A stretch of 64,000 nt of DNA from Haliotis rubra (taxonomy: Eukaryota), in contig NW_025765059.1 of NCBI RefSeq assembly GCF_003918875.1, positions 1,612,001 to 1,676,000 of the forward strand, in the 5' to 3' direction. Both the position numbers and the translations under genes were made by a program. The notes under the pieces are model-generated. The model made no database searches. It was not told the origin of the DNA and was given only the letters and a program-made list of their open reading frames with translations. Numbering within the stretch: position 1 is the first letter of the stretch; every line of letters begins with the position of its first letter. Positions 28,001 through 53,762 of this stretch are shown here, piece after piece.

Positions 28001-28477
28001 ACCGCCTCCAGAGAATCCAAAATAAAACTGCTCGTATGGTTACCAGGTTACCCCAGTCCGCTGACATAAACAACATCTTAAGATCGCTGCACTGGTTGCC
28101 CATCCGTGCTCGTGTTGTTTTTAAACTCCTGTGCCTAGCCTACCAGTGTGTTCACGGAACTGCTCCTGAGTATCTGTGTGAACTCCTGACACAGTACCAG
28201 CCAGCTAGAGGTCTCCGGTCCAGTTCAAAGCAACTCCTTGACATTCCCAGATTTCAGCTAAAAACATTCGGAGGCAGATCTTTCAGTGTGACAGCAGCTG
28301 TCAAATGGAATCAGCTCCCTGACTCTTTAAAACACTCTGACTCTCTTCCATCATTCAAAGCCCTCCTGAAGACCTATCTGTTCAACAACTATCTCTGACT
28401 CTGGACTTTCTTTGCTAAAGCGCTTTGAGCGTGCATTGGTGTGTGGAAAAGCGCTATACAAATGGAACTATTATTAC
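25100..28477 (+). mobile_element. L2/CR1-clade LINE (APE endonuclease + reverse transcriptase), one frameshift; 5' boundary approximate
   Basis: ORF 25560-27335 (WNAQS, ITESWL, LGDFN, SDH; YRPVSNL, LLDLSAAF) continues in 27343-28398 (GVPQGSVLGP, YADD); 3' AAGCGCT...AAGCGCTATAC and (TAT)n tail. Confidence 0.93.
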
Positions 28478-29085
28478 ATGGCGGTATTGGCAATATTGTC
28501 CACAACGATTGGGCAGACTGGATTCTTCTCAGCCAGTATCATTGCAGCCTTGCGGCGGTCATCCAGTGACTTGTGAGAGGCAATCTGAACATTGTACTCG
28601 AAGCGCCAACCATCAGATGCATGCGCCTCTTCAATATAAATGATCAGAAAATCGGCGATGTTGGCAAACTCTGACGCCACGGCGTTGTAGCGCTTGAATT
28701 TGCTCATGAACGGTCGTCAGGTACAGCTCCCAAAGTTGACCACCAGGGGGCGCCCTTGTTTCTGAAAGTCCAGCAATCGGTGGATCTGTGTTCCGTCAAG
28801 TGAGTGCAGTCGAGGATTGGGGGCAAGATGGTGGAGGAAGGCGTCCTTATACAAGTCTAGATACGCTGCACGGAATACACCTTTGAAGTGACTCAGCTTC
28901 AGAACAGAACGATCGTAGTCTCTGGCAAGGTCTTCACTGGTCGCCCCCTCTACTTTTGTTGTAGTTACAACAACAATGTGTTTCCCGAACACTCTTTTGA
29001 AGATGGTGGAGACGAGGTAGACCCAGAGACGGAGTATTATTCCCAGCAGGCGCCACAGCAGTACCGTCTGTCTTACCACGCCCAT
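28474..29085 (-). pseudogene. Dio: Iodothyronine deiodinase copy A, 3'-truncated by the LINE
   Basis: NFGSCT-TGA(28717-28719)-RPF...YIEEAHASDGW...DNIANTA, then runs into the LINE tail and stops; the last ~50 codons, including FERL, are absent. Confidence 0.88.
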
Positions 29086-29199
29086 CGTACTGAAAGTTAA
29101 ACAGCAAATTTGACTTAAGTGTGCATGTGTTCAATCGAAACATAGTAAAAGAATATCGGGGTTCTTAACCAATTTTACTGAACATGACAGCCAATACAA

Positions 29200-29546
29200 A
29201 TCCGTGGTGTACTGGTTAGAGGTTCCGCTAGGAGAGCAGAAGGTCGCGGGTTCGATCCCCGGCTGCATCACACCAAAAGACGTTAAAATATGGTACTTGT
29301 TGGTCCCTGCCTGGCGCTCGGCATTAATGGGTACAACAAGGACTGGTCGGCTCGGAGTCAGTATAATGTGTCTGAGTGGGGTATTCATGCTTAACAGCGG
29401 CATGGTATCTCAGTGGGCTAGCACTATAAAACCAGGTAAGGTCTGGGCTAGTACAAGTAGCTACACATACACACGCATGCACGTTGTCATATGAGCGAAA
29501 TAATGTTAAGCGCGACGTTAAACCCCATTTTACCCCACCTCACCTC
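29200..29546 (+). mobile_element. tRNA-head SINE family 4, one copy per tandem unit (also ~33893-34238, ~38655-39001)
   Basis: A box TGGTGTACTGG, B box GGTTCGATCCC, (CACCT)n tail. Confidence 0.75.
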
Positions 29547-31999
29547 AAATGCAAAGAGAGTTAGGTGTGTATTTACGCATGTCATTCTCGCCGTATTTTT
29601 CCGTGGTGTTCAATTTTCATTGACAAGCACTGCTACCTGCAAATAAGATCATATTTCACCAAGCAATGCCAACCAGAAACATGTATGTGGCATTATGCAG
29701 TGTGCGTTCTCAAACCTTTCTCGGTCAATAAGTCGCACATTGGACTATTCTTGGAGTCCTACTCTGTTACAAAGAGGGCGATATTGCGATTGTTCCTACA
29801 CAATTGGCGGTAATTCATTTAATCAGGTGGACAATTTGACCGGTGAAAATTTACAGTGGACAGAATTTGTATTTGAACTGAACAGTTGCAATATAAAACG
29901 TATCAAAAGTGTGACTTTCATGTGTCATATGCATGAAACGGAAAAATGTCAATTCGTTGATTACACATGAAAATGTATAAGGGCTGATTGAGGAAATCTA
30001 GTATGCATTAAGAATGCAATGATATATGTATTTCGGATTTCGTACTGTATTTGCCAGAAATTCCCAGCATATTGCAGTTTACATGGATTAAGTATACGCC
30101 ATCATCGTCTCTGTATAGCCCTTCATGTTGAGGGGATTACCTCCAGACAGCCACACAGGACACGTGGAGCTGCAGGTATGAATGCAAGCTATGTCGGTCA
30201 AGTCCAGTAATCTACAGTCCTTTGACAACCGTCTAAAGGATACACGACTTGACCCACATTCTACATTGCCTGGTTGTTGTTTAACGCTGCACTCAGCAAT
30301 ATCCAGGTTTATCACGTCGGTCATAAATAATCTGGGTTGGACAATTGAAAGAGGATGGTTATGACTATCGAGATACGCAAATGAGATATGATGACAAGGT
30401 CAGCGAGTCTGACCATCAGACACAGCTGGTCCCCTTTATGACAGGCATGGGTCGCTGAAGATATACTTCAGCCATAAGTTAGTTAAAGCGAATATCTTGG
30501 TTTTGTTTTGCCAACCTAAGCAGAAATTCCGAGTCACATGTGTAAACACAGAGTGCTGTGAAACGGAAAGCACATCCATGGCGATTCCTACATTTTGTCT
30601 AAAATGTCTAACCTCAAAGTTCCATGTGTTATCAGTGGGGAAGACCAGACTGTCCCATATTTCTCGGTAAACGTCAGATGACACTAAAAGTCTTGCTCAA
30701 AATGACAAATTGGGGTGTGAGAATGTCTTTGGTTACCACCATGTTATGTGACATCTCATTGATGATGGAACAGAGTCATTCCTGGGGTTTGTCATGTGGG
30801 GTAGTGGTGTACAAAGGTGAAAAGTCAAATCTTTTGATGTAATTGAACTTGATGTTTTCTGAGATTGCCAAAATTCTTGCAAATCCTTTGAAGATTTGCA
30901 AATCTACTTATTATTGATTCCACTTGTCTGCAATTCATTCTCAGAACATGGCAACTGGCTGGGATAAAATGGGTTTCAGAACGATTTCAACTTTCCAATC
31001 GTCACCTTTGTGTCGAGAAATATTTCAACAGCTGCGGCTACATTGCATACATTTCGAACCTTCGAGTACGGAGGTCTTTCTTGGGCGATTTCGAAGAACA
31101 CCACATTGCTCAAACGTTGTTTGACCAAAGTTCCATCATACAAGGCCTAGGTAATACTTTCTAATGTGTTATTACCCGTGAAGATCCGGGGTAGAATAGG
31201 TCTTCAGTACCCCATGCTTGCCACAAAAGGCGACTATGCTTGTCGTAAGAGGCTCGCTGACTTGGTTGACACATGTCATCGGTTCCCAATTACGTAGATC
31301 GATGCTCATGCTGTTGATCACTGGATTGTCTGGTCCAGACTCGATTATTTACAGACCGCCGCCATATAGCTGGAATATTGCTGAGTGCGGCGTAAAACTA
31401 AACTCACTCACTCACTCTTATGTTTTGTGGAACACGTGTGGAGGTCATTATCAAATATGGCTCATCGGTGACAAACATGATATCCTTGTCTTTATTTATT
31501 GTAGATGAACAATTGACTTGCCTTTGCGTGTGTACGTGCCGGGTGTCCTCGGTGGACAGGATACGCTCACCTATTGCTAACATCTGGTGCCATCACCGTA
31601 TCATGGCGATTCATGTATACATGCTAAGACATGATATAGTCGAAATCATGCAATCGCATTTGCTATTAGCAGGGACAATCATTATAGATACAGAGAAGGC
31701 GTGATCGTTTCTTTTTACTCCAACTCTGTTTTCTCTTTTTCAGTTTGACCACGTGATCAGTGATGCTATCGCGTACACGTTCAGATGGTTGATTTTCTCC
31801 TCTGGTTTAAAAAACCCCTGTAATACGATTCAATTATTTCCCAGTCACGTTAAATCTCACATTTGTCATAACCGTTTATTATTGGTTCATAGTAAATGCA
31901 CAACTCTTCATGTTCAGCACAAATATTTTATTACAGATTAAAAACTGTGGTACATGTCTATACTGAGTAAAATGGACACATCATGAAAATACTATCATC

Positions 32000-32097
32000 G
32001 TTTTAACCCTTGTGACGTCAGCCTATAGCATCGGTCATTGTAGATGCACAGGTTTTCTGCAGTGACGTCATAGAGGGATGACTCACTGGGGTTAAAC
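32000..32097 (-). promoter_or_regulatory. SECIS element of Dio copy B
   Basis: AUGAC-GUCACUGCAG-AAAACCUGUGCAU-CUACAAUGAC-CGAU (UGAN/NGAN quartet, apical AAAA, two C.A mismatches in helix II); basal helix UUUAACCC..GUGA/UCAC..GGGUUAAA; AATAAA signals at ~31875 and ~31928. Confidence 0.8.
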
Positions 32098-33018
32098 GGG
32101 GAACAATTTATCACGATGTTCCTTAAATTGTTGATATAAACCTGACATGGTAGTGTACCATCATTTGATACCCCAAGTGCTTCACCTAGGCCTTTAATGC
32201 TTTAATGAGAGGAGTTCCTAGTGAAACGACGTAACTGCACTTATATATCATGGTTTGAGTTCTGACCTTTGTATATAATGTTTCAAGTAAACCCCTCCTA
32301 TATTCCGATCAATATCAGGACTGCCAAGAGTGTGTTCGGCAGGTAATGGTGAACCATTGAAATGTAAGTGTAATTTCTTGTTCGTTGGCCATTTGAGAGT
32401 TTTATTTCAACTGGGGTGGAGCACAAAGATTTACATCTTGGGTAGCGTATCTTGGGGAATTTCCCCTAGAATAGCGCATCAAGAACGATAAGAATGGTGA
32501 AAATGTTGACTTTCATTAATTGCAAGATTGTCTTGATTTCACTTAAATGTATGAAAAACACGTGATCAAAATGGCGTGAAAAACATACGGTCGTGGGAAC
32601 CCGCCAAACAGACACCCCCAACCTTAGGAAGATCACTTTTGGAACGTTCACATGTACTTGCCCCTAAAACTACTACTACTACTACTGGTGAATTTCTAAA
32701 AAGTTAATATTCAGCGAGAAGTATACCGGCCGGCCTAACGGTATTTCACAAAATCAAAGGTAGGGTTGGACCTTTCAACACAAGGCGTTAACTGGTTATA
32801 ATTCTCTAAATTCGGCTCCAGTCTGTCGGTCAGCTGTGCTTAAAAGTCTATATGCCTATATTCATTTCATTTTCAAACATACCTTCACATCTTGTGTACC
32901 TGTACCCGTCAATTTGTGGTTTTCTTAACGTGCATAGTAAGATTGCTTGCTTGGAGATGGTATAGGGTGAGTTACGTTACTTTAAAAGTTCAGCAAATGA
33001 AAATGTAATTGTTTAACT

Positions 33019-33777
33019 TCAGCAATGTTTGTCTGTAGAGCCCCTGTATGACGCCAACCACTGATGTACTTCGTCTAAATTGTAGAACTCAGGACCTCTT
33101 CCCCCCTCATATGCTATAACTCCATCTTTGATGATGTACAGTCGCTCAAAGTAGCCGCCATATTGGATGTTGGCGGTGTTGGCAATATTGTCCACAACTA
33201 TTGGGCAGACTGGATTCTTCTCAGCCAATATCATTGCAGCTTTGCGGCGGTCATCAAGTGACTTATGAGAGGCAATCTGAACATTGTACTCGAAGCGCCA
33301 ACCATCAGATGCATGCGCCTCTTCAATATAAATGATCAGAAAATCGGCGATGTTGGCAAACTCTGACGCCACGGCGTTGTAGCGCTTGAATTTGCTCATG
33401 AACGGTCGTCAGGTGCAGCTCCCAAAGTTGACCACCAGGGGGCGCCCTTGTTTCTGAAAGTCCAGCAATCGGTGGATCTGTGTTCCGTCAAGTGAGTGCA
33501 GTCGAGGATTGGGGGGCAAGATGGTGGAGGAAGGCGTCCTTATACAAGTCTAGATACGCTGCACGGAATATAGCTTTGAAGTGACTCAGCTTCAGAACAG
33601 AACGATCGTAGTCTCTGGCAAGGTCTTCACTGGTCGCCCCTCTACTTTTGTTGTAGTAACAACAACAATGTGTTTCCCGAATACTCTTTTGAAGATTGTG
33701 GAGACGAGGTAGACCCAGAGACGGAGTATTATTCCCAGCAGGCGCCACAGCAGTACCGTCTGTCTTACCACGCCCAT
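33019..33777 (-). pseudogene. Dio: Iodothyronine deiodinase copy B; two homopolymer frameshifts (pseudogene or sequencing error)
   Basis: Same length as copy C, but C4 instead of C5 at 33637-33640 and G6 instead of G5 at 33511-33516; Sec TGA at 33409-33411. Confidence 0.75.
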
Positions 33778-36700
33778 CGTACTGAAAGTTAAACAGCGAA
33801 TTTGACTTAATTGTGCATGTGTTCAATCGAAACATAGTAAAAGAATATCGGGGTTCTTAACCAATTTTACTGAACATGACAGCAAATACAAATCCGTGGT
33901 GTACTGGTTAGAGCGTCCGCCCGGAGACCGGAAGGTCGCGGGTTCGATCCCCGGCTGCATAACACCAAAAGACGTTAAAATATGGTACTTGTTGGTCCCT
34001 GCCTGGCGCTCGGCATTAATGGGTACAACAAGGTCTGGTCGGCTCGGAGTCAGTATAATGTGTCTGAGTGGGGTATTCATGCTTAACAGCGGCATGGTAT
34101 CTCAGTGGGCTAGCACTATAAAACCAGGTAAAGTCTGGGCTAGTACAAGTAGCTACACATACACACGCATGCACGTTGTCATATGAGCGAAATAATGTTA
34201 AGCGCGACGTTAAACTCCATTTTACCCCACCTCACCTCAAATGCAAAGAGAGTTAGGTGTGTATTTACGCATGTCATTCTCACCGTATTTTGCCGTGGTG
34301 TTCAATTACGTTACGTTCTCTATCAGTATTTCTATAAACTCCTAAACTTAAACAAGAGTTCATATTTCACTGCTACCAAAATAAGATCATATTTCACCAA
34401 GCAATGCCAACCAGAAACAATTGTGCAGTGTGCGTTCTCAAACCTTTCTCGGTCAATAAGTCGCATATTGTATGACTGTACACGCACGTCACCAGAGTAA
34501 TGTATCATTATCTGACAGTTGACATATGTGTGTCGGCCAGGTGAAATGTGTCACTATTCTTGGAGTCCTACTCTGTTACAAAGAGGGCGATATTGCGATT
34601 GTCCCTACACAATTGGTGGTAATTCATTTAATCAGGTGGACAATTTGACCGGTGAAAATTTACAATGGACAGAATTTGTATTTGAACTGAACAGTTGCAA
34701 TATGAAAAGTGTGACTTTCATGTGTCATATGCATGAAACGGAAAAATGTCAATTCGTTGATTACACATGAAAATGTATAAGGAGGAAATCTAGTATGCAT
34801 TAAGAATGCAATGATATATCTATTTCGGATTTCGTACTGTATTTGCCAGAAATTCCCAGCATATTGCAGTTTACATGGATTAAGTATATACGCCATCATC
34901 GTCTCTGTATAGCCCTTCATGTTGAGGGGATTACCTCCAGACAGCCACACAGGACACGTGGAGCTGCAGGTATGAATGCAAGCTATGTCGGTCAAGTCCA
35001 GTAATCTACAGTCCTTTGACAACCGTCTAAAGGATACACGACTTGACCCACATTCTACATTGCCTGGTTGTTGTTTAACGCTGCACTCAGCAATATCCAG
35101 GTTTACCACGTCGGTCATAAATAATCTGGGTTGGACAATTGAAAGAGGATGGTTATGACTATCGAGATACGCAAATGAGATATGATGACAAGGTCAGCGA
35201 GTCTGACCATCAGACACAGCTGGTCCCCTTTATGACAGGCATGGGTCGCTGAAGATATACTTCAGCCATAAGTTAGTTAAAGCGAATATCTTGGTTTTGT
35301 TTTGCCAACCTAAGCAGAAATTCCGAGTCACATGTGTAAACACAGAGTGCTGTGAAACGGAAAGCACATCCATGGCGATTCCTACATTTTGTCTAAAATG
35401 TCTAACCTCAAAGTTTCACGTGTTATCAGTGGGGAAGACCAGAATGTCCCATATTTCTCGGTAAACGTCAGATGACACTAAAAGTCTTGCTCATAATGAC
35501 AAATTGGGGTGTGAGGATGTCTTTGGTCACCACCATGTTATGTGACATCTCATTGATGATGGAACAGAGTCATTCCTGGGGTTTGTCATGTGGGGTAGTG
35601 GTGTAACAAAGGTGAAAAGTCAAATCTTTTGATGTAATTGAACTTGATGTTTTCTGAGATTGCCAAAATTCTTGCAAATCCTTTGAAGATTTGCAAATCT
35701 ACTTATTATTGATTCCACTTGTCTGTAATTCATTCTCAGAACATGGCAACTGGCTGGGATAGAATGGGTTTCAGAACGATTTCAACTTTCCAATCGTCAC
35801 CTTTGTGTCGAGAAATATGTCAACAGCTTCGGCTACATTGCATACATTTCGAACCTTCGAGTACGGAGGTCTTTCTTGGGCGATTTCGAAGAACACCACA
35901 TTGCTCAAACGTTGTTTGACCAAAGTTTCATCATGCAAGGCCTAGGTAATACTTTCTAATGTTTTATATTCCCCGTGAAGATCCGGGGTAGAATAGGTCT
36001 TCAGCAACCCATGCTTGCCACAAAAGGCGACTATGCTTGTCGTAAGAGGCTCGCTGACTTGGTTGGCACATGTCATCTGTTCCCAATTACGCAGATTGAT
36101 GCTCATGCTGTTGATCACTGGATTGTCTGGTCCAGACTCGATTATTTACAGACTGCTGCAATATAGCTGGAATATTGCTGAGTGCGGCTTAAAACTAAAC
36201 TCACTCACTCACTCTTATGTTTTGTGGAACACGTGTGGAGGTCATTATCAAATATGGCGCATCGGTGACAAACATGATATCCTTGTCTTTATTTATTGTA
36301 GATGAACAATTGACTTGCCTTTGCGTGTGTATGTGCCGGGTGTCCTCGGTGGACAGGATACGCTCATCTATTGCTAACATCTGGTGCCATCACCGTATCA
36401 TGGCGATTCATGTATACATGCTAAGATATGATATAGTCGAAATCATACAATCGCATTTGCTATTAGCAGGGACAATCATTATAAATACAGAGAAGGCGTG
36501 ATCGTTTCTTTTTACTCCAACTCTGTTTTCTCTTTTTCAGTTTGACCACGTGATCAATGATGCTATCGCGTACACGTTCAGATTGTTGATTTTCTCCTCT
36601 GGTACAAAAACCCCTGTAATACGATTTAATTATTTCCCAGTCACGTTAAATCTCACATTTGTCATAACCGGTTATTATTGGTTCATAGTAAATGCACAAC

Positions 36701-36795
36701 TCTTCATGTTCAGCTCAAATATTTTATTACAGATTAATAACTGTGGTACATGTCTATACTGAGTAAAATGGACACATCATGAAAATACTATCATC

Positions 36796-36893
36796 GTTTT
36801 AACCCTTGTGACGTCAGCCTATAGCATCGGTCAATGTAGATGCACAGGTTTTCTGCAGTGACGTCATAGAGGGATGACTCACTGGGGTTAAAC
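36796..36893 (-). promoter_or_regulatory. SECIS element of Dio copy C
   Basis: Same fold as copy B; the single helix-II substitution falls at an already mismatched position. Confidence 0.8.
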
Positions 36894-37780
36894 GGGAAAC
36901 AATTTATCACGATGTTCCTTAAATTGTTGATATAAACCTGACATGGTAGTGTACCATCATTTGATACCCCAAGTGCTTCACCTAGGCCTTTAATGAGAGG
37001 AGTTCCTAGTGAAACGACGTAACTGCACTTATATATCATGGTTTGAGTTCTGACCTTTGTATATAATGTTTGAAGTAAACCCCTCCTATATTCCGATCAA
37101 CATCAGGACTGCCAAGATTGTGTTCGGCAGGTAATGGTGAACCATTGAAATGTAAGTGTAATTTCTTGTTCGTTGGCCATTTGAGAGTTCTATTTCAACT
37201 ACCCAAGATTTACATCTAGGGTAGCGTATCTTGGGGACTTTCCCCTAGAGTAGCGCATCAAAAACGATAACAATGGTGAAACACAATTATCAAAATGTAT
37301 TTCACATGTACTTAAACGATCGCAAAAAACACGGTCGTGATAAGGTAACCCGCCAATCGAGCCAAACACACACCCCAACCTTAGGAAGATCACTTTTGGG
37401 AACGTTCACATGTACTTGCCCCTAAAACTACTACTACTACTACTACTGGTGAATTTCTAAAAAGTTAATATTCAGTGAGAAGTATACCGGCCGGCCTAAC
37501 GGCATTTCACAATTCAAAGGTATCGGGTTGGACCTTTCAACACAAAGCGTTAACTGGTTATAATTCTCTAAATTCGGCTCCAGTCTGTCGGTCAGCTGTG
37601 CTTAAAAGTCTATATGCCTATATTCATTTCATTTTCAAACCTACCTTCACATCTTGTGTACCTGTACCCGTCAATTTGTGGTTTTCTTAACGTGCATAGT
37701 AAGATTGCTTGCTTGGAGATGGTATAGGGTGAGTTACGTTACTTTAAAAGTTCAGCAAATGAAAATGTAATTGTTTAACT

Positions 37781-38539
37781 TCAGCAATGTTTGTCTGTAG
37801 AGCCCCTGTATGACGCCAACCACTGATGTACTTCGTCTAAATTGTAGAACTCAGGACCTCTTCCCCCCTCATATGCTATAACTCCATCTTTGATGATGTA
37901 CAGTCGCTCAAAGTAGCCGCCATATTGGATGTTGGCGGTGTTGGCAATATTGTCCACAACGATTGGGCAGACTGGATTCTTCTCAGCCAATATCATTGCA
38001 GCCTTGCGGCGGTCATCCAGTGACTTATGAGAGGCAATCTGAACATTGTACTCGAAGCGCCAACCATCAGATGCATGCGCCTCTTCAATATAAATGATCA
38101 GAAAATCGGCGATGTTGTCAAACTCAGACGCCACGGCGTTGTAGCGCTTGAATTTGCTCATGAACGGTCGTCAGGTGCAGCTCCCAAAGTTGACCACCAG
38201 GGGGCGCCCTTGTTTCTGAAAGTCCAGCAATCGGTGGATCTGTGTTCCGTCAAGTGAGTGCAGTCGAGGATTGGGGGCAAGATGGTGGAGGAAGGCGTCC
38301 TTATACAAGTCTAGATACGCTGCACGGAATATAGCTTTGAAGTGACTCAGCTTCAGAACAGAACGATCGTAGTCTCTGGCAAGGTCTTCACTGGTCGCCC
38401 CCTCTACTTTTGTTGTAGTAACAACAACAATGTGTTTCCCGAATACTCTTTTGAAGATTGTAGAGACGAGGTAGACCCAGAGACGGAGTATTATTCCCAG
38501 CAGGCGCCACAGCAGTACCGTCTGTCTTACCACGCCCAT
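37781..38539 (-). CDS. Dio: Iodothyronine deiodinase (selenoprotein) copy C, 252 aa; 254 aa (to 37775) if the terminal UGA is also Sec
   Basis: Hydrophobic N-terminus, RPLVVNFGSCT-U(38171-38173)-RPF, YIEEAHASDGW, YGGYFERL, GGRGP; the two ORF-track pieces are in frame across the TGA; SECIS downstream. Confidence 0.93.
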
Positions 38540-40701
38540 CGTACTGAAAGTTAAACAGCGAATTTGACTTAATTGTGCATGTGTTCAATCGAAACATAGT
38601 AAAAGAATATCGGGGTTCTTAACCAATTTTACTGAACATGACAGCCAATACAAATCCGTGGTGTACTGGTTAGAGCGTCCGCCCGGAGAGCGGAAGGTCG
38701 CGGGTTCGATCCCCGGCTGCATAACACCAAAAGACGTTAAAATATGGTACTTGTTGGTCCCTGCCTGGCGCTCGGCATTAATGGGTACAACAAGGACTGA
38801 TCGGCCCGGAGTCAGTAAAATGTGTCTGAGTTGGGTATTCATGCTTAACAAGCGGCATGGTATCTCAGTGGGCTTGCACTATAAAACCAGGTAAATTCTG
38901 GGCTAGTACAAGTAGCTACACATACACACGCACGCACGTTGTCATATGAGCGAAATAATGTTAAGCACGACGTTAAACCCCATTTTACCCCACCTCACCT
39001 CAACTGAAAGAGAGTTAGGTGTGTATTTACGCATGTCATTCTCACCGTATTTTGCCGTAGTGTTCAAACGTACGTTAGGTGCTTTATCAGTATTTCTATA
39101 AACTCCTAAACTTAAACACTTCAAAGTTCAGTTTTCATTGACAAGCACTGCTACCTGCAAATAAGATCATATTTCACCAAGCAATGCCAACCAGAAACAA
39201 GTATGTGGCATTATGCAGTGTGCGTTCTCAAACCTTTCTCGGTCAATAAGTCGCATATTGTATGACTGTACACGCACGTCACCTCAGTAATGTATCATTA
39301 TCTGACAGTTGACATATGTGTGTTGGCCAGGTGAAATGTATCACTATTCTTGGAGTCCTACTCTGTTACAAAGAGGGCGATATTGCAATTGTCCCCACAC
39401 AATTGGTGGGAATTCATTTAATCAGGTGGACAATTTGACCGGTGAAAATTTACAGTGGACAGAATTTATATTTGAACTGAACAGTTGCAATATGAAACGT
39501 ATGAAAAGTGTGACTTTCATGTGTCATATGCATGAAACGGAAAAATGTCAATTCGTTGATTACACATGAAAATGTATAAGGACTGATTGAGGAAATCTAG
39601 TATGCATTAAGAATACAATGATATATCTATTTCGGATTTCGTACTGTATTTGCCAGAAATTCCCAGCATATTGCAGTTGACATGGATTAAGTACTTATAC
39701 GCCATCATCGTCTCTGTATAGCCCTTCATGTTGAGGGGATTACCTCCAGACAGCCACACACAACACGTGGAGCTGCAGGTATGAATGCAAGCTATGTCGG
39801 TCAAGTCCAGTAATCTACATTCCTTTGACAACCGTCCAAAGGATACACGACTTGACCCACATTCTACATTGCCTGGTTGTTGTTTAACGCTGCACTCAGC
39901 AATATCCAGGTTTACCACGTCGGTCATAAATAATCTGAGTTGGGCAATTGAAAGAGGGTGGTTATAACTATCGAGATACGCAAATGAGATATGATGACAA
40001 GGTCAGCGAGTCTGACCATCAGACACCGCTGGTCCCCTTTATGACATGCATGGGTGGCTGAAGATATACTTCAGCCATAAGTTAGTTAAAGCAATTTCTT
40101 GGTTTTGTTCCTTTGAAGATTTGCAAATCTACTTATTATTGATTCCACTTGTCTGCAATTCATTCTCAGAACATGGCAACTGGCTGGGATAGAATGGGTT
40201 TCAGAACGATTTCAACTTTCCAATCGTCACCTTTGTGTCAAGAAATATTTCAACAGCTGCGGCTACATTGCATACATTTCGAACCTTCGAGTACGGAGGT
40301 CTTTCTTGGGCGATTTCGAAGAACACCACATTGCTCAAACATTGTTTGACCAAAGTTTCATCATACAAGGCCTACGTAATACTTTCTAATGTTTTATTAC
40401 CCGTGAAGATCCGGGGTAGAATAGGTCTTCAGCAACCCATGCTTGCCGCAAAAGGCGACTATGCTTGTCATAAGAGGTTCGCTGACTTGGTTGACACATG
40501 TCATCGGTTCCCAATTACGCAGATCGATGCTCATGCTGTTGATCACTAGATTGTCTGGTCCAGACTCGATTATTTACAGACCGCCGCCATAAAGCTGGAA
40601 TATTGCTGAGTGCGGCGTAAAACTAAACTCACTTACTCACTCTTATGTTTTATGGAACACGTGTGGAGGTCATTATCAAATATGGCACATCGGTGACAAA
40701 C

Positions 40702-41260
40702 CATTCTCTTCCCCACAGAGGTTACTTGTCATATCTTCCTACGAACCTCTGTTCTAATACGGCCATATTTCCCGGTTCTCGTAAAATCCCCTAGCGGCAA
40801 AAGATCGCAACACGAATTATCTCCCTTCTTTCTATCCAATCAGAACACGTGTTACATCGACTTAGATTCAACTTGACTAACACAAGCAAATGTGAGGGCA
40901 CAAATATCCCCCCATCTGCCGGGGACTTGTGTTGATGTTACACACAAGACGTTTAATGGCTAGCTTGTCCGTTGTCAACGAGGGCGATGGAGACGCCACT
41001 GATCCGCCATAACATGACTGAGTTCTGTCTAGCAGAAACGTTTGCGCATCGCGCAGGGGAAGAGGTTTAGTTTTCTCGAAGTATACGGAAATTACCGAGG
41101 CCTTGCGAATGATCACTTTTGAAACAACGTCGCTGATTGCACAACTAAATCTGATTGCCTCCAATCACGAGTCTTGAACGCTCACACCATGAAAGGGCCG
41201 TATTAGAACAGAGGTTACGTAGGAAGATATGACAGGAGTAACCTCTGTGGGAAGAGAATG
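40702..41260. mobile_element. MITE unique to the C-D spacer
   Basis: ~63-bp TIRs (CATTCTCTTCCC..CAGAGGTTAC...); GTGACAAAC duplicated on both sides (9-bp TSD, or 7 bp if the termini are CC..GG); empty site in the other two spacers. Confidence 0.9.
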
Positions 41261-41793
41261 GTGACAAACATGATATCCTTGTGTTTATTTATTGTAGATG
41301 AACAATTGACTTGCCTTTGCGTGTGTATGTGCCGGGTGTCCTCGGTGGACAGGATACGCTCACCTATTGCTAACATCTGGTGCCATCACCGTATCATGGC
41401 GATTCATGTACACATGCTAAGATATGATATAGTCGAAATCATACAATCGCATTTGCTATTAGCAGGGACAATCATTATAGATACAGAGAAGGCGTGATCG
41501 TTTCTTTTTACTCCAACTCTGTTTTCTCTTTTTCAGTTTGACCACGTGATCAGTGATGCTATCGCGTACACGTTCGGATGGTTGATTTTCTCCTCTGGTA
41601 AAAAAAACCCTGTAATACGATTCAATTATTTCCCAGTCACGTTAAATCTCACATTTGTCATAACCGTTTATTATTGGTTCATAGTAAATGCACAACTCTT
41701 CATGTTCAGCACAAAAATATTTTATTACAGATTAAAAACTGTGGTACATGTCTATACTGAGTAAAATGGACACATCATGAAAATACTATCATC

Positions 41794-41891
41794 GTTTTAA
41801 CCCTTGTGACGTCAGCCTATAGCATCGGTCATTGTAGATGCACAGGTTTTCTGCAGTGACGTCATAGAGGGACGACTCACTGGGGTTAAAC
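41794..41891 (-). promoter_or_regulatory. SECIS element of Dio copy D
   Basis: Core and helix II identical to the copy B SECIS. Confidence 0.8.
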
Positions 41892-42843
41892 GGGGAACAA
41901 TTTATCACGATGTTCCTTAACTTGTTGATATAAACCTGACATGGTAGTGTACCATCATTTGATACCTCAAGTGCTTCACCTAGGCCTTTAATGAGAGGAG
42001 TTCCTAGTGAGACGACGTAACTGCACTTATATATCATGGTTTGAGTTCTGACCTTTGTATATAATGTTTCAAGTAAACCCCTCCTATATTCCGATCAATA
42101 TCAGGACTGCCAAGAGTGTGTTCGGCAGGTAATAGTGAACCATTGAAATGTAAGTGTAATTTCTTGTTCGTTGGCCATTTGAGAGTTTTATTTCAACTGG
42201 GGTGGAGCATCCACAAAGATTTACATCTTGGGTATCGTATCTTGGGGAATTTCCGCTAGAGTAGCGCATCAAGAACGATAAGAATGGTCAGTGTAAAATG
42301 TTGACTTTCATTAATTGGAAGATTGTCTTGATTTCACCTTTTCTTACTTAAACGATCGCTATCTGAAAAAACACAATTATCAAAATGTATACACGTGATA
42401 AGGTAAAATACGGTCGTGGGCACCCCGCCAAACAGACACCCCCAACCTTAGGAAGATCACTTTTGGGAACGTTCACATGTACTTGCCCCTAAAACTACTA
42501 CTACTACTACTTGTGAATTTCTAAAAAGTTAATATTCAGCGAGAAGTATACCGGCCGGCCTAACGGTATTTCATAAAATCAAAGGTAGGGTTGGACCTTT
42601 CAACACAAGGCGTTAACTGGTTATAATTCTCTAAATTCGGCTCCAGTCTGTCGGTCTGCTGTGCTTAAAAGTCTATATGCCTATGTTCATTTCATTTTCA
42701 AACATACTTTCACATCTTGTGTACCTGTTCCCGTCAATTTGTGGTTTTCTTAACGTGCATAGTAAGATTGCTTGCTTGGAGATGGTACAGGGTGAGTTAC
42801 GTTACTTTAAAAGTTCAGCAAATGAAAATGTAATTGTTTAACT

Positions 42844-43608
42844 TCAGCAATGTTTGTCTGTAGAACCCCTGTATGACGCCAACCACTGATGTACTTCGTC
42901 TAAATTGTAGAACTCAGGACCTCTTCCCCCCTCATATGCTATAACTCCATCTTTGATGATGTACAGTCGCTCAAAGTAGCCGCCATATTGGATGTTGGCG
43001 GTATTGGCAATATTGTCCACAACGATTGGGCAGACTGGATTCTTCTCAGCCAATATCATTGCAGCCTTGCGGCGGTCATCCAGTGACTTGTGAGAGGCAA
43101 TCTGAACATTGTACTCGAAGCGCCAACCATCAGATGCATGCGCCTCTTCAATATAAATGATCAGAAAATCGGCGATGTTTGCAAACTCTGACGCTATGGC
43201 GTTGTAGCGCTTGAATTTGCTCATGAACGGTCGTCAGGTGCAGCTCCCAAAGTTGACCACCAGGGGGCGCCCTTGTTTCTGAAAGTCCAGCAATCGGTGG
43301 ATCTGTGTTCCGTCAAGAGAGTGCAGTCGAGGATTTGGGGCAAGATGGTGGAGGAAGGCGTCCTTATACAAGTCTAGATACGCTGCACGGAATATAGCTT
43401 TGAAGTGACTCAGCTTCAGAACAGAACGATCGTAGTCTCTGGCAAGGTCTTCACTGGTCGCCCCCTCTACTTTTGTTTTTGAGAGAACAGGGCTTCGTTT
43501 AGGTACCTTGAAAACTCTTGTGAAGATGGTGGAGACGAGGTAGACGCAGAGACGGAGTATTATCCCCAGCAGGCGCCACAGCAGCACCGCCTGTCTTCCC
43601 ACGCCCAT
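42844..43608 (-). CDS. Dio: Iodothyronine deiodinase (selenoprotein) copy D, 254 aa; 256 aa (to 42838) with terminal UGA readthrough
   Basis: ATG at 43608 just after a tttcag acceptor, homologous to the ATG of A-C; Sec TGA at 43234-43236; same motifs as copy C; divergent N-terminal linker. Confidence 0.92.
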
Positions 43609-45465
43609 CTTACTGAAAGTGAAACAGCAAACATATCTGAAATGTGTGTAGGTATCCAAATGAAACCTAAAGCAGTGGACATAAATGGTCAATACACTGA
43701 CTCCAGCAGAAATATTATTTTCACTATTTTGTTGGTACCCTTCCATCATTACATGTATTTCTATGAACTTTTAAAATGTGAAAATTATGACAATAATTAT
43801 GAAAGTTAATGATATCGTTTTGCCGTAAAGGTTGGCAACTCTGCTCTTGAAATGATGTAACCTGCGGTAGATCCTCAAGCACCGTGTGAGTGTAGACTAT
43901 CAACTAGTCTCTGACATGAACATATTTACTGAAAAAAGTTCATAGTAAAAAAAAATATAATATAATGAAAAGGAGCCCTGAGACTTTCTTCATTCCTGAA
44001 GCTGAGGAAATCTAGACTTGCCACATTTTGTAGACTTGCGTGGGCTTTCTTGGATATATTTGCTTCAGGGTCTGTACGACAGACTACGTGTGAGTGGTAC
44101 AGGTATGTGTGGCACTTTGGAACGCCATTCTTGTGATATGTCATCATATGATTTACAACTGACTCTTCCCAAGTTTCTGTTGTTTGTTCTTTAAATCAGA
44201 TTGTTTCCAAAATGCTGACGGAAACAGAAACACAAGAGTGAAACAGAAATTCAAATTGAAAAATGAAGCTAATATTCGGCGTCCGGACAGCTATCAGCTA
44301 TCGGTCAGTCAATAAGAGTTCCGACTTCCTTCTGTGGTTGAAAACGCAATGTACCAGCGGATATTCGAAAAATGTAAGGGGCAGTTATTGTTGAAATAGG
44401 AATTACTGATATCACAAATTCAGTGTATGATAACTAAAATTCATAACAATTTTATATCACAAAATTAATTATTGATATCGCAAAATTTAATGTAGGACAT
44501 AAAATACTTACGACTTTAAGACATCAAAAATTTGATACATTGATATGAACAAATACGTTACTGGATATCATAAAATTCATTTCCAGATGTTAAATTTTCA
44601 TGTATGACATTTATTTATATCAATTACTCATTTTCTGATCGATAATTGAATTATTGCTATGGTAATTATTTCATGATATCAATAATCAATTCATGCTCTT
44701 CTTTATTCGAAATTGGTTCAGCAAAAACTCATTTTGTGATCTATAATTGAATTATTGGTATGATAATTATTTTATTACTTCAATAATTATTCATATCAAT
44801 AATTATCTCTCACAACTTGTGAGAGAGTGACTTAGATTCAACGCCATTTTTAATGGTATTCCAATTTCAAAATCATCAGCAGCAGCAGCTTTATGTTGGA
44901 TGAAAGGACGAAGAGATGCCGGTTTCAGACGTTTATCACTTTGGTGCAACCTACGAGGACGAATGACGTGCTTACAAACATGGAAACACAATCTGGTCTA
45001 ACCTATACATCCACAATCACGGGGCTATTACTTGTACAGCGGCGCCTTGTCCCGTGCCCCGTGCCCCGTGCCCCGTGCCAACTGAGATGTTGGATGGACA
45101 TAATAAGATAATAGTAACTGCTTGTTGTACAATGTTCAGCACATTACCTACTAAATACTTATTGCGACATAACTACAGATATGTGCATACAGAGAAGTAT
45201 ATGTCAGGTATGAAAGAGAGGAATGCAAACGTGGAGAAATAATACCGACCTCGACAACTAACACCTGGAATGACGATAGTTGTTCCCATCAGCAGTGGAT
45301 TTCTGTGTCGTTCAAGAGGTCCTCCCCGATGTGACTCTAGGTCACAGACCGTTCTATTTTTAGGTCACCACAATTGATGTAAAGGGCGAAGTAATATGCT
45401 GGTCATATACATGCGTGATCGTGACCGATGAAGGTGAAGGTTGTACTGTATACGGATTTAAACTG

Positions 45466-49285: not shown

Positions 49286-49440
49286 ATTTGATGTGATGAT
49301 AACGCCAGTTTTAAGATATGGATCGGAAGTGGGGGATTTGAAGAACTTGACCTAATAGAGAATATCTATCCAAAATTTCTGAAACGTGTATCTGGACTAA
49401 GAAAATCTACGCCGCATTTCATGGTCTACGGCAGAATTTG
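49286..49440 (+). mobile_element. LINE RT C-terminal relic
   Basis: FDVMITPVLRYGSEV / KFLKRVSGLRKSTPHFMVYG-like peptide with a frameshift. Confidence 0.5.
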
Positions 49441-49859
49441 CAGAACTCCAATATATATATAAAATTACCAACGTATGTTATCGAGACGATGCCGAGCAGT
49501 AATTGCTGCCAATGGTGGCCATACAAAGTACTCACTTTGACGCCTCCTTGTGAACTCAAGTAAACAGAAACGCAACAATAATGGCTGCTGTTGTGTAGGG
49601 AATTCAAGACGTGTGAATTTGCACCTTTTTACCATTTAAATTACAGTACATGAAATAATTAAACTAACGCAATATATTTCATTTTTGAAGAGTGTGTGTG
49701 TATGTATATACATCGACAGATAGACGAATGTTTTTGATGATGATTTGGAGAGTTATATATGTTACAATTCTGAATGGGTTAACTCAGTTAGAGTCTGTCA
49801 TTGTTTAATAGAGGATATGAAAAAAATCCAATCATTATCTGCATCTAAGGCCGCATATA

Positions 49860-51036: not shown

Positions 51037-52724
51037 ATATTCCCTCATACCCCACAGCAACCAAGCTCAAAATAGCGAACAGATACCATCCAAACCACCT
51101 GTACTTCCACCCGTTTCCATCACTCCCGGCAAACTTCATTATCCAAATTCATTAAAAAAATTAGGATACAAATCTTACGCCCCGCTCTTTGGTCATGATC
51201 AACCATCTTTCGTCCAAACACGGCCTTGCGTGACTGTGCATCATGTCGGGAAGCGCACGTAAAATCCCCAATCCATCATCAAAACTATCGTCTATCTCTC
51301 CTCTATACACTTTGGAAGGCTTGGCAAAGCCCATGGAAAGTACTGCCATACATTCCCATCTGTTAGACATTCAAGACAGTTCATTTGTGGTTTTGTCAAA
51401 TTTATGAATTTGACAAATGATTTTTCAAAGAGTAGTCTGCCGTGCAGCTGGAGAATGTTGCGAAAGCTCTGACACGGCCTGTAATGGGATGTCCTTTGAC
51501 CTCTGGTTCGCAGTAGCGAGAACAAAAATCTGATCTCTATGCGACTGACATATACCCCAAGGGATGCTGCTACAGCGCCTTATCTTACCAACATGTGTCA
51601 AATAGCCGTTGTGAAAGAATTCAAACAGCTGTTCGATCGAGCTAACTGTATTGTATCACGTGACATTGATTCTTGTAGTTATTTGTTTCGTATCGGCTTA
51701 TAAAGGTTCAGGGTCCTTCTCAGGAACCCACTCGCAGCCTGTTTTGTTTCGTGGCTTGGTATAAATGATATATTCCACAACTCAGAATATATACTTCCCA
51801 CTAGGCTGATTTCATGGTATTTCATCAAGGTCACGTAAACCTGTCACATGTAAACACTCTGATGGATTACAAATATATATTTGTCGTGTGTTACGTGAAA
51901 TGTCGATAAAAAGGTAAAAAGGAACATAATGAGGCTCACAAGTTAATCCGACGTGGTAGTTTCCTATATCAGCATGAGATGCCCATCGCTCCTGTAATAC
52001 TACATCCTGCGTATGTCGCCTATGTAATCTCTGCAAGATAAAGTCCCGTCTCACCGGTACAATCTGTCCAAGTTGCATATCTGTCCTATCTTATGTTTTA
52101 CTGTTGATCGAATTGTTTGTTGTTGTCGCCGAACTCAGCATATTCCGATATGACGGCGGTCTGTAATTATTCGTGCCTGGACCAGACAATCCAGTGACAG
52201 ACATATACTTTCATATGGCGATAATTCAACACGTAGCGGATGGTACCCGTCAAGTGTCAAGTCCAATGTCAGATACCATCAGATGCTGGGGGCTAGAAAT
52301 TGATACACAATATAATACATATTAATCTGCAAAGCCGTTTTCTATCAACAGGCAAACATTAAACACAGTGGTGTGAAACTATCTTTCGTGGACATTGAAA
52401 TCTTGATTTATCTCTTCAATCCGAACGCAGTGTATGAGAGTGACATATTGTTTAGTCTGAACATATGACCAAAAGAAATACGCTCCATTCAATTCTTTAA
52501 TCAGAAAGAGCATACATGTCGATGTAAACAATCACACCTAAAGCAGAAGACATGAATATAATTGTTGGACACGCAAAATACTCTAGAAGTTGACAAGAAC
52601 TGCAATATTTAAGAACAAAAGAAGAAAAGTCGAGAAAATAATAATGAACAAATCAAGAACGACGAATATGACGAATACATTCCACAATGGACCCCCCCTG
52701 CACGTGCCGGCATGTCATTCTCCC

Positions 52725-52807
52725 CAGTAATGTGTATAGTCACTTCAGTCTCTGCAGCTGTGGTCAGTTTGCAACAGCGACGTCACACTCTATACAACAT
52801 TCACCTG
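52725..52807 (-). promoter_or_regulatory. SECIS element of Dio copy E (GUGA core, type II-like)
   Basis: GUGAC-GUCGCUGUUG-CAAA-CUG(ACCA)CAG-CUGCAGAGAC-UGAA with basal helix UGUAUAG/CUAUACA; ~200 nt after the stop codon. Confidence 0.75.
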
Positions 52808-53003
52808 AGTGGAATAAGATGCAGGTTGCCGTGACCCAACCATTAGTGTCAGTACAATACACAGTATTTGTTAACTTTATCAGACATCTTAAAAAATGTA
52901 TAAATTCTGATTACCTTTCTGCTATTGCAACAACAACTACCCTACGTCTAGGCATTGTATGAGACACAGCAGAATATCTTTGAACAGTATTATAATGGTT
53001 CCC

Positions 53004-53762
53004 CTATTGAGTGCCTCTGTATTTTGACAACCAGTCATACACCTCTTCTATTTTATACCCAACTGGTCCTCGCATGCCCTCATAAACAATCACTCCGTTT
53101 AGCACTATGTACAGACGCTCGAACAGACCGCCGTAGTGCTTGTTAGCTTCATCGTCCATGTTGTCCACCACAATCTCACAATCGCAGGGTTCCAGTTCAC
53201 CCAGGCGCCGAGCTGCTGCGACCCTGTCTTCAAGGGTGTTGTGACGATGGATATCTATATTGTTTCTGAAGAACCACCCATCAGTAGGATGGGCTTCTTC
53301 AATGTACACAATCAGAAAATCCGCTAGGTTGGTAAAGTCAGCAACGATCTCTCTGAATCTCGCCATCTTTACCATAAACGGGGGTCAGGTGCAGCTACCG
53401 AAGTTCAACACCAGAGGGCGATCTTTCTTCCCGAAATCTAGAAGTTTCTTTCGTGTCTTTCCGTCCATTGGAATCACTTCCGGGTTGGGAGCCTTGCCGT
53501 TGAGAGAAGCTGTTTTTAGAAGATCCATGTATCTACATCGGAAGTGGGCACTCAGAAATGTGAAGCTGTGAATGCTTTGTGAGTAATCGTCCCTGCTGAG
53601 CCCAGAGCCGTCCATCACGGAGCCGATCCTGTCAACCAGTTCCTTGCGGTAGGACAGGAAGAGACGGGCCAATATTTGTTGCATGAAAAAGAACCCAACC
53701 ATGTGGCAGCACAGGAAAAATACTCGGAGCATCAAGGTCAAGGATGCCGTTAGAGACGCCAT
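53004..53762 (-). CDS. Dio: Iodothyronine deiodinase (selenoprotein), divergent paralog E, 252 aa
   Basis: Hydrophobic N-terminus, RPLVLNFGSCT-U(53385-53387)-PPF, YIEEAHPTDGW, YGGLFERL, GMRGP; TAG stop; acceptor ttttcag at ~53778. Confidence 0.94.

What the first reader, a model, noticed from the sequence alone, without database searches (positions are those of the whole stretch)
28474..53762. Five-gene tandem cluster of selenoprotein deiodinases hidden by in-frame UGA codons
Seen: five co-oriented single-exon CDSs, each cut in two by the ORF finder at the same SCT-TGA codon, with SECIS-like stems downstream. Four are recent ~4.8-kb unit duplicates and one is an old paralog. Established: vertebrates have three dispersed Dio genes, and gene predictors routinely truncate or mis-splice selenoproteins. 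Inference: a lineage-specific birth-and-death expansion in an invertebrate, possibly for thyroid-hormone-like signalling or for dehalogenating dietary iodinated/brominated aromatics.
Basis: partly seen in the sequence, partly recalled or inferred. Interest (0 to 1): 0.75.

Follow-up and report, generated by a model that had tools for sequence, protein, structure and literature searches.

The report
Abalone selenocysteine deiodinase gene cluster
This is a real tandem cluster of deiodinase-family selenoprotein genes in what is very probably the blacklip abalone; only three of the five copies are intact, one copy type is shown to be transcribed, and such clusters are already known from other invertebrates.

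Summary
Five minus-strand loci match Pfam T4_deiodinase, and each has an in-frame TGA at the active-site Sec position. C, D and E are intact. A is cut off at codon 202, where a LINE abuts it, and has no 3'UTR. B carries two homopolymer frameshifts, which may be assembly errors. A-D form a 15-kb array of 4.7-5.1 kb units. E is an old paralog, 46% identical.

TGA is read as Sec: all 15 motif-bearing deiodinase loci found in this genome keep it, and the part downstream of it has dN/dS 0.08 against another Haliotis. Rfam finds no SECIS in the window at its threshold. SECIS-shaped elements do lie about 0.95 kb after the stops of B, C and D (SECIS_1 is the best family at D, 17.1 bits), and a GUGA-type candidate lies 217 nt after E.

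RNA contigs of a close relative show a D-type mRNA: a 5' leader exon, a 1.6-kb intron, then one exon with the whole CDS and the 3'UTR. A-C lack that leader exon yet show purifying selection, which is unexplained.

A second, larger cluster lies on another contig. Public annotation splits these genes at the TGA. Tandem Sec-deiodinase clusters were described in invertebrates in 2012, so this is a new member of a known kind. Function is inferred only.

The parts
45250..45407 (-). Non-coding 5' leader exon of gene D
   Evidence: RNA-type contig 27 of run X9 joins 45250-45407 directly to 43612. The donor reads GAG|GT and the exon is unique in the window.
43613..45249 (-). Intron 1 of gene D (GT..AG, 1637 nt)
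   Evidence: It is skipped in X9 contig 27. The stretch flanking the acceptor (43448-43882) is contiguous in contig 21 of run X4, whose library type is not on record. The acceptor CTTTCAG lies 4 nt before the ATG.
42844..43608 (-). Gene D CDS, intact (254 codons plus TGA); Sec codon at 43234-43236
   Evidence: X9/X10 contigs cover 42369-43612.
41811..41879 (-). SECIS of D (AUGA..AAAA..GA; helix II has two C.A mismatches); AATAAA follows at 41721-41726
   Evidence: Rfam SECIS_1 is the best family here at 17.1 bits, below its cut-off of 35. The element is 70% identical over 139 nt to the orphan SECIS. Poly(A) signal. X9 contig 26 runs from the CDS to 41852.
37781..38539 (-). Gene C CDS, intact (252 codons plus TGA); Sec codon at 38171-38173; splice acceptor at 38543/38544
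36813..36881 (-). SECIS of C; AATAAA follows at 36723-36728
33019..33777 (-). Gene B, with two homopolymer frameshifts (about 33639 and 33516); Sec codon at 33409-33411
32017..32085 (-). SECIS of B; AATAAA follows at 31927-31932
28479..29085 (-). Gene A, 3'-truncated after codon 202; Sec codon at 28717-28719; no SECIS
25560..28478 (+). Non-LTR retrotransposon (endonuclease plus reverse transcriptase) whose 3' end abuts the truncation point of A
28479..43628 (-). Tandem array: three full units plus 633 nt. Each unit holds ~60 nt of intron end, the coding exon, the 3'UTR with SECIS and poly(A) signal, and a ~2.9-kb spacer containing a SINE.
53004..53762 (-). Gene E CDS, intact old paralog (252 codons, stop TAG); Sec codon at 53385-53387; acceptor-like CAG 15 nt before the ATG
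52731..52800 (-). Candidate SECIS of E (GUGA core, AAA 12 nt later, 7-bp helix I)
   Evidence: Found by my own scan, and its MFE fold has the SECIS shape. Rfam gives no SECIS_1 match.
22416..22484 (-). Orphan, well-formed SECIS with AATAAA 89 nt downstream; remnant of a deiodinase 3'UTR
   Evidence: (SECIS_1, 20.4 bits).

Best explanation
The window holds one of two clusters of iodothyronine-deiodinase-family selenoprotein genes in an abalone genome, very probably Haliotis rubra.

What each intact gene (C, D, E) encodes:
- An enzyme of about 250 residues with a hydrophobic N-terminus and a thioredoxin-fold catalytic domain.
- The active-site residue is selenocysteine, encoded by UGA and recoded with the help of a SECIS hairpin in the 3'UTR. 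The presence of these signals is shown. The recoding itself is inferred from conservation.
- By homology, the enzyme reductively removes halogen from iodothyronine-like substrates. This is inferred and was not tested.

Shown gene structure of D: a short non-coding leader exon, a 1.6-kb intron, then one terminal exon of about 1.9 kb. That exon carries the whole CDS, about 0.95 kb of 3'UTR, the SECIS and a poly(A) signal.

How the array arose: within the Haliotis lineage this terminal exon, together with ~60 nt of intron end and a ~2.9-kb spacer, was duplicated in tandem to give C, B and A. Unequal crossing-over is the likely mechanism (inferred). The promoter and leader exon were not duplicated.

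State of the copies: the array is in birth-and-death turnover. A has lost its 3' end next to a LINE. B carries two frameshifts, if these are not assembly errors. C and D are intact. Substitutions specific to the copies are mostly synonymous, so A-C were functional for most of their history.

How A-C are transcribed is open. The options are splicing from D's leader exon to the downstream acceptors, or promoters inside the spacer.
For: Family membership:
- Pfam PF00837 matches both halves of every copy, at E values of 1e-14 to 1e-44.
- Whole-genome matches score 161-231 bits with one TGA inside.
- The C-halves match the mouse Dio3 catalytic domain 4TR3 at E about 1e-31, and the YIEEAHxSDGW, H(K/R)SL(D/E)DR, Cys and GGRGP motifs are kept.

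Sec decoding:
- The TGA sits at the same site in 15 loci.
- Against an orthologous contig from another Haliotis, the N-half has dN/dS 0.32 and the C-half, after the TGA, 0.08 at dS 0.6.

SECIS:
- Four sequence-unrelated SECIS families with the same AUGA/AAA/GA architecture lie 0.2-1 kb downstream of the genes, on the coding strand.
- Rfam SECIS_1 scores 40.5 bits for one C2423 element, 20.4 for the orphan and 17.1 for D. In each case it is the top family with a full-length alignment.
- AATAAA lies 84 nt after the SECIS of B, C and D.

Transcription and splicing: X9 contigs 26 and 27 and X10 contig 16.

Array anatomy.

Selection within the array:
- dN/dS is 0.06-0.12 in the catalytic part.
- Among variable codons at position 43 or later, 11 are synonymous and 4 nonsynonymous, p = 1.7e-4.

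Annotation split.

Organism: the genome has 1,378,282,171 bases in 2855 contigs. The published H. rubra assembly A6 has 1,378,265,264 bp in 2,854 scaffolds (PMC6774278).
Against: - No SECIS in the window reaches Rfam's gathering score.
- The B/C/D SECIS has two C.A mismatches in a 10-bp helix II and is not the MFE fold.
- E's candidate has a GUGA core and no Rfam match.
- Covariation within the window's five elements is not significant. The observed covariation score was reached by 90 of 500 shuffles; only the slid-register control is clear, with 85.5% of cells paired against at most 45.5%.
- Expression was shown only for a D-type transcript, only from assembled contigs of runs whose RNA status is a guess, and in a relative about 3% diverged. 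Nothing was learned about the expression of A, B, C or E.
- Copy number could not be checked, because only contigs and no raw reads were available.
- No enzymatic function was tested. The residue after Sec is Arg instead of the usual Pro in A-D.
Confidence: 0.85

Rival explanations
1. Only D (and E) are working genes. C, B and A are promoter-less, dead-on-arrival copies of D's terminal exon that are simply too young to have decayed much.
For: - The leader exon 45250-45407 exists once in the window, upstream of D only.
- A is truncated and B is frameshifted.
- The only transcript evidence is D-type: it aligns to D's distinctive N-terminal region without gaps.
Against: - Copy-specific changes in A, B and C are mostly synonymous. 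Among variable codons at position 43 or later, 11 are synonymous and 4 nonsynonymous, where about 74% nonsynonymous is expected under neutrality (p = 1.7e-4).
- B versus C has dN 0.0017 against dS 0.030.
- The 3' splice site region is kept in A-C.
- The public gene set has models on A and C.
Confidence: 0.3
2. The A-D array is wholly or partly an assembly artefact: haplotypes or noisy long reads of one or two genes laid out in tandem.
For: - If this is the published H. rubra assembly, it was built from about 30x Nanopore reads of a highly heterozygous animal, merged from two assemblies and purged of haplotigs (PMC6774278).
- B's two lesions are single-base homopolymer changes, a typical Nanopore error.
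- Read depth could not be used.
Against: - The units differ by 2.5-6% and by many indels, and have different lengths of 4692, 4762 and 5063 nt.
- D has a different N-terminal linker and upstream sequence.
- A ends at a LINE.
- There is no N gap within 28-54 kb.
- Short-read contigs of the best-holding run X1 carry both D-type and B/C-type letters at 41832 and 41873.
- No second copy of the locus exists elsewhere in the assembly.
Confidence: 0.1
3. The in-frame TGAs are true stops and these loci are pseudogenes or encode only half-proteins.
For: - ORF finders and the public annotation stop at the TGA.
- Rfam at gathering score reports no SECIS in the window.
Against: - The same TGA is kept in 15 paralogs and in another species.
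- The region downstream of it has dN/dS 0.08.
- Catalytic motifs downstream of the TGA are conserved with mouse Dio3.
- SECIS-type elements are present.
- The family is a classical selenoprotein family (PMC3473315, PMC8481496).
Confidence: 0.02

Closest known systems
Tandem Sec-deiodinase (DI) clusters of invertebrates, described by Jiang et al. 2012 (BMC Genomics 13:446, PMC3473315)
   Same: - Multiple Sec-containing DI genes sit in tandem, sometimes on both strands.
- Some copies have no SECIS, and some SECIS elements are surplus.
- Reported counts are 11 in Trichoplax (one cluster of 6), 12 in Capitella, 9 in amphioxus and 4 in the gastropod Lottia.
   Different: - Here there are at least 15 motif-bearing loci, about 8 of them intact, in two clusters of one gastropod genome. 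That is well above the 4 reported for Lottia.
- One sub-array is very young (dS 0.03-0.07).
- That sub-array was duplicated without its leader exon.
Vertebrate type 3 deiodinase (Dio3; mouse catalytic domain, PDB 4TR3/4TR4)
   Same: - It is the best solved-structure match, at E about 1e-31 over 116-119 residues.
- It has an intronless CDS (PMC3316567) and an SCT-U active site.
- The YIEEAH, H-x-SL-E/D-DR, Cys and GGRGP motifs are conserved.
   Different: - In A-D the Sec is followed by Arg, not Pro.
- A-D carry a C-terminal extension, STDKHC.
- Substrate and physiological role in abalone are unknown.
- The abalone genes are clustered and multi-copy.
Cloned mollusc deiodinases: oyster CgDx/CgDy, mussel McDx/McDy, scallop, and the abalone H. 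diversicolor
   Same: Proteins of about 240-260 residues, with one TGA-encoded Sec in a conserved centre and a SECIS in the 3'UTR (PMC8481496; PMC10083991).
   Different: Those studies report one or two genes per species. No orthology to them was established here, because their sequences were not fetched.
Second in-frame UGA of vertebrate Dio2
   Same: A-D end in Cys-UGA-Ser-UAA. This is a UGA a few codons before another stop, in an mRNA that carries a SECIS, as in Dio2 (PMC3316567).
   Different: In Dio2 the extension is not conserved and the UGA is judged to be a stop. Here the UGA follows a Cys, only this clade uses UGA, and the two-codon tail is kept in another Haliotis.

Membership tests
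Iodothyronine deiodinase family (Pfam PF00837) | Profile match above the curated cut-off (27 bits) across the whole domain | tested here: met
   The N-halves score 53-57 bits (profile positions about 7-113) and the C-halves 144-150 bits (118-236). Read through, the loci score 161-231 bits.
Iodothyronine deiodinase family (Pfam PF00837) | Active-site motif FGS(C/A)T-Sec-P-(P/S)-F, with Sec encoded by in-frame TGA | tested here: met
   E has FGSCT-TGA-PPF. A-D have FGSCT-TGA-RPF, an Arg variant at position +1. The TGA is kept in another Haliotis.
Iodothyronine deiodinase family (Pfam PF00837) | Catalytic-domain residues conserved with the solved Dio3 structure (acid/His of YIEEAH, the His of H-x-S-L-E-D-R, the distal Cys, the Arg of GGRGP) | tested here: met
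   Alignments to 4TR3 show all of these motifs in C and E. The roles of the residues are recalled from the literature and were not tested.
Iodothyronine deiodinase family (Pfam PF00837) | Reductive deiodination of iodothyronines | not testable with these tools
   No assay was possible; the function is inferred by homology.
Eukaryotic selenoprotein gene | [quoted passage not shown] | tested here: met
   B, C and D carry such elements 0.93-0.98 kb after the stop, followed by AATAAA, and reached by an RNA contig in D. Helix II has two C.A mismatches. E has only a GUGA-type candidate. A has none.
Rfam SECIS_1 (RF00031) | Covariance-model score at or above the gathering cut-off of 35 bits | tested here: not met
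   Window elements score 20.4 bits (orphan), 17.1 bits (D) and nothing (E). Whole-window scans were blank. An element of the sister cluster scores 40.5 bits.
Eukaryotic selenoprotein gene | Purifying selection continues downstream of the UGA | tested here: met
   dN/dS is 0.08-0.09 for the 129 codons after the TGA, against the other Haliotis contig L035.
Eukaryotic selenoprotein gene | Sec actually inserted (75Se labelling or mass spectrometry) | not testable with these tools
   No data were available.

The most novel reading that the evidence does not exclude
The A-D array works as one transcription unit. A single promoter and leader exon (45250-45407) is spliced alternatively to any of several interchangeable terminal exons. 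Each terminal exon is a complete selenoenzyme cassette with a start codon, Sec codon, stop, SECIS and poly(A) site, so copy choice is made by splicing and polyadenylation rather than by separate promoters. This would explain why the promoter-less copies A-C keep intact 3' splice sites and evolve under purifying selection.
Probability: 0.2. Interest if true: 0.6.

Novelty: new member of a known kind. Interest (0 to 1): 0.4.

Why it matters
- It corrects the annotation of a whole gene family in a commercially fished mollusc. The genes are now split at the UGA or missing from the gene set.
- It shows that abalone carry far more Sec-deiodinase loci (at least 15, about 8 intact) than the one or two usually cloned from molluscs. 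That matters for work on thyroid-hormone-like control of abalone metamorphosis and for using molluscs in thyroid-disruptor screens.
- The young array gives a natural series in which a selenoprotein cassette (Sec codon plus SECIS) is born, maintained and lost.
- It raises a testable question about how promoter-less copies stay under selection.
- It is not a new kind of system.

Tried and rejected
1. Rfam scans of the whole window at gathering score, of 26-56 kb at E<=10, and of the 1.5 kb downstream of C and of E found no SECIS. Only 111-121-nt scans showed SECIS_1 as the top family.
2. My first SECIS scans gave false leads, such as a GTGA 130 nt after the stop of B-D and several weak hairpins. 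I dropped these once the elements 0.95 kb downstream proved homologous to the orphan SECIS.
3. I tested whether contig C2423 is a haplotig of this locus. It is not: it shares no extended DNA similarity apart from repeat-derived stretches (a SINE and one other), and its proteins are 36-53% identical to those of this locus.
4. I looked for A's missing 3' end on the far side of the LINE. It is not in the window.
5. Read depth as a copy-number test was not possible, because all runs are kept as contigs.
6. A covariation test on the window's five SECIS elements was underpowered, since three of the rows are nearly identical.
7. A MAFFT alignment of all ten SECIS elements misaligned the 3' arms, so I built no covariance model.
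8. The protein-atlas search gave the family but no useful taxon.
9. The large protein searches were not used, because the family was not in doubt. No phylogeny with other phyla was made.
10. No protein read through a stop was sent to any tool.
Full report
**What is there**

ORF listing of 27-55 kb shows five minus-strand pairs of ORFs. In each pair the first ORF ends ...LVVNFGSCT, or ...LVLNFGSCT in E. The second begins just after a TGA.

Pfam places the N-halves on positions about 7-113 and the C-halves on positions 118-236 of T4_deiodinase (PF00837). E values run from 1e-14 to 1e-44. Each CDS is therefore one uninterrupted exon broken only by the TGA at the Sec position. Direct reading gives AGC TGC ACC TGA CGA CCG TTC (SCT-U-RPF) in B-D, with the synonymous TGT for Cys in A. 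E reads ...TGA CCC CCG TTT (SCT-U-PPF).

The C-halves match the mouse Dio3 catalytic domain (PDB 4TR3) at E about 1e-31. They keep the YIEEAHxSDGW, H-x-SL-D/E-DR, Cys and GGRGP motifs.

**State of the five copies**

- C (37781-38539), D (42844-43608) and E (53004-53762) are intact.
- A is not intact. In the four-way alignment its homology ends after codon 202, at 28479. What follows is the 3' end of a plus-strand non-LTR retrotransposon, with an endonuclease plus RT ORF at 25560-28398. The missing ~50 codons and 3'UTR are nowhere else in the window.
- B has a 1-nt deletion in a G5 run and a 1-nt insertion in a C5 run 125 nt later, with a stop between them.
- B otherwise differs from C by 5 synonymous changes and 1 nonsynonymous change. 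The genome matches the published 30x Nanopore assembly of Haliotis rubra in size and contig number. G000 has 1,378,282,171 bases in 2855 contigs and the published assembly has 1,378,265,264 bp in 2,854 scaffolds. B's two frameshifts may therefore be assembly errors. I could not decide this.

**The array**

A self-comparison defines a tandem array at 28479-43628. It has three full units of 4692, 4762 and 5063 nt plus 633 nt, at 93.7-97.5% identity. There is no N gap in the region.

Read on the coding strand, each unit consists of:
- about 60 nt of intron end with the splice acceptor;
- the coding exon;
- the 3'UTR with a SECIS and a poly(A) signal;
- a ~2.9-kb spacer that includes a SINE.

D differs from A-C in codons 1-42 (dN 0.16, dS 0.31) and upstream. 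From codon 43 onward dS is only about 0.05. E is 46% identical to A-D in protein.

**The rest of the family**

A six-frame search of the whole genome with PF00837 found 22 matches. Five are in this window. One is a weak hit on contig C2278. Sixteen lie on contig C2423 at 1.664-1.764 Mb.

That 100-kb region is not a haplotig of this one. It holds ten loci with the FGSC(S/T)-TGA-PPF motif. About five of them are intact genes of 248-253 codons. The others are truncated, frameshifted or fragments. The five-gene cluster is thus the smaller part of a family of at least 15 loci.

**Is the TGA read as selenocysteine?**

Three lines of evidence say yes.

1. All 15 motif-bearing loci keep TGA at that codon.
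2. A Logan contig from another Haliotis sample (L035, 86% identical in DNA to D) encodes the same protein with the same TGA. Against D, the 124 codons before the TGA give dN/dS 0.32. The 129 codons after it give dN/dS 0.08 at dS 0.60. The part after the 'stop' is therefore the most constrained part of the gene.
3. SECIS-type elements are present downstream, as described next.

**SECIS elements**

Rfam reports none in the window at its gathering score, nor at E<=10 in longer scans. On the minus strand it reads CCUAG-AUGA-C-GUCAUUACAG-AAAA...CUGUAGUGAC-U-GA with a perfect 10-bp helix II. Scanned alone, it matches SECIS_1 full-length at 20.4 bits.

It is 70% identical over 139 nt to one site in each of the B, C and D units, 0.93-0.98 kb after their stops.
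- These sites keep AUGA, AAAA and GA.
- They show one compensatory change (A-U to G-C) relative to the orphan.
- They have two C.A mismatches in helix II and are not the MFE fold.
- At D, SECIS_1 is still the top Rfam family with a full-length alignment, at 17.1 bits against a cut-off of 35.
- AATAAA follows 84 nt later in B, C and D, and 89 nt later at the orphan.

E has a candidate 217 nt after its stop.
- It has a GUGA core, AAA 12 nt later, a 7-bp helix I and an MFE fold of SECIS shape.
- Rfam gives no match.
- At my scan's settings about 9 presumably false hits occurred in 368 kb of sequence-strand. A hit within 1 kb after E therefore has a chance expectation of about 0.02.

In the sister cluster, two further SECIS sequence families lie 0.3-0.65 kb after the genes. 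Their helix II sequences are AACACAGAC/GUCUGUGUU and CACGUGACC/GGUCACGUG. One element scores 40.5 bits, E = 1.7e-7. Four unrelated helix sequences with one architecture, at one relative position, are the strongest structural argument. The formal covariation test on the window's five elements alone is not significant.

**Transcription**

The runs that hold this stretch are coded and kept only as contigs. Laid on 39501-45500, two small runs of 'organism B' (RNA by guess, about 3% diverged) gave three informative contigs.
- X9 contig 27 joins 45250-45407 directly to 43612-43198.
- X9 contig 26 runs from 43174 through the stop to 41852, inside the SECIS.
- X10 contig 16 covers 42586-43612 and ends exactly at 43612.

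The skipped 1637 nt begin GT and end CTTTCAG. Contig 21 of run X4 from the same organism (library type not on record) is contiguous across the acceptor, covering 43448-43882. The X9 join is therefore best read as a splice. It shows that a D-type gene is transcribed as a leader exon plus one long terminal exon. Depth is meaningless for contigs, so neither copy number nor the expression of A, B, C or E could be assessed.

**An unexplained point**

The leader exon occurs once in the window and not at all in the C2423 stretch, so A-C have no copy of it. Yet A-C keep the branch-site, polypyrimidine and AG region. Among variable codons from codon 43 on, 11 are synonymous and 4 nonsynonymous, where about 74% nonsynonymous is expected under neutrality (p = 1.7e-4). 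Pairwise dN/dS is 0.06-0.12.

These copies were therefore functional for most of their short history and must be, or have been, transcribed. Three readings are open:
- They are spliced from D's leader exon as alternative terminal exons.
- They use promoters inside the spacer.
- The selection signal reflects conversion from D.

**Comparison with what is known**

- Jiang et al. 2012 (PMC3473315) counted 11 DI genes in Trichoplax, 12 in Capitella, 9 in amphioxus and 4 in Lottia. They described tandem DI clusters, including copies without a SECIS and surplus SECIS elements.
- Vertebrate Dio3 genes are intronless, and Dio2 has a second UGA near its end (PMC3316567).
- Mollusc deiodinases with TGA and SECIS have been cloned from oyster, mussel, scallop and an abalone. 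Thyroid hormones induce abalone metamorphosis (PMC8481496, PMC10083991).
- The misannotation is the usual one. The public protein collection holds C as two proteins of 122 and 126 aa and A's N-half alone. The halves of B, D and E are absent as exact sequences.

**Verdict**

This is a real and correctly recognised selenoprotein gene cluster. It needs three corrections: three of the five copies are intact, the SECIS positions and strengths differ from the first description, and there is a leader exon. It is a new member of a known kind. The points beyond the ordinary are:
- the size of the family in abalone;
- the promoter-less but constrained copies;
- the Arg after Sec;
- the Cys-UGA-Ser-stop tail of the A-D clade.

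**Function**

Reductive dehalogenation of iodothyronine-like compounds is inferred from homology only.

Noticed in passing
window 37775-37792, 42838-42855 and 33013-33030 (minus strand); L035:~855-870: Only the A-D clade ends ...DKHC-TGA-AGT-TAA, on a 6-residue tail extension. E and the eight C2423 paralogs whose stops were read all end in TAG or TAA. Another Haliotis keeps ...DKQC-TGA-AGT-TAG. Because the mRNA carries a SECIS, a fraction of the protein may end in Cys-Sec-Ser. The vertebrate Dio2 precedent was judged to be a stop (PMC3316567).
   Followed up: partly
window 22416-22484 (minus strand), with 22468-24002: This is an orphan SECIS with a perfect helix II and AATAAA 89 nt downstream, but no deiodinase CDS nearby. 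A 102-nt minisatellite of 15 copies starts exactly at its AUGA core and repeats the SECIS's 5' flank.
   Followed up: partly
G000:C2423:1664000-1765000 (L023-L034): This is a second, larger deiodinase cluster on both strands. It holds ten loci with FGSC(S/T)-TGA-PPF plus fragments. About five are intact, and there are two further SECIS sequence families, some duplicated together with gene fragments.
   Followed up: partly
window 43228-43236, 38165-38173, 33403-33411 and 28711-28719: In A-D the residue after Sec is Arg (CGA), where the other paralogs and the vertebrate enzymes have Pro. The Arg is kept in the other Haliotis contig.
   Followed up: partly
window 29201-29544, 33893-34236 and 38655-38999: A SINE-like repeat with a tRNA-like box (GGUUCGAUCCCCGG) sits just upstream of the acceptor region of A, B and C. 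An 89%-identical copy lies in the C2423 stretch.
   Followed up: no
window 40300-41300 and 43700-44100: These are very high-copy repeats, with contig depths of 1e5-1e7. The 43883-44086 piece is absent from the relative's contig, so it is an insertion polymorphism in D's intron.
   Followed up: no
window 50041-50727 (minus strand): Broken ORFs between D and E look like a Tc1/mariner-type transposase remnant. This is judged from the translations only.
   Followed up: no
window 60188-60433: This is the only run of N in the window (246 nt). It lies outside the cluster and was left untouched.
   Followed up: no
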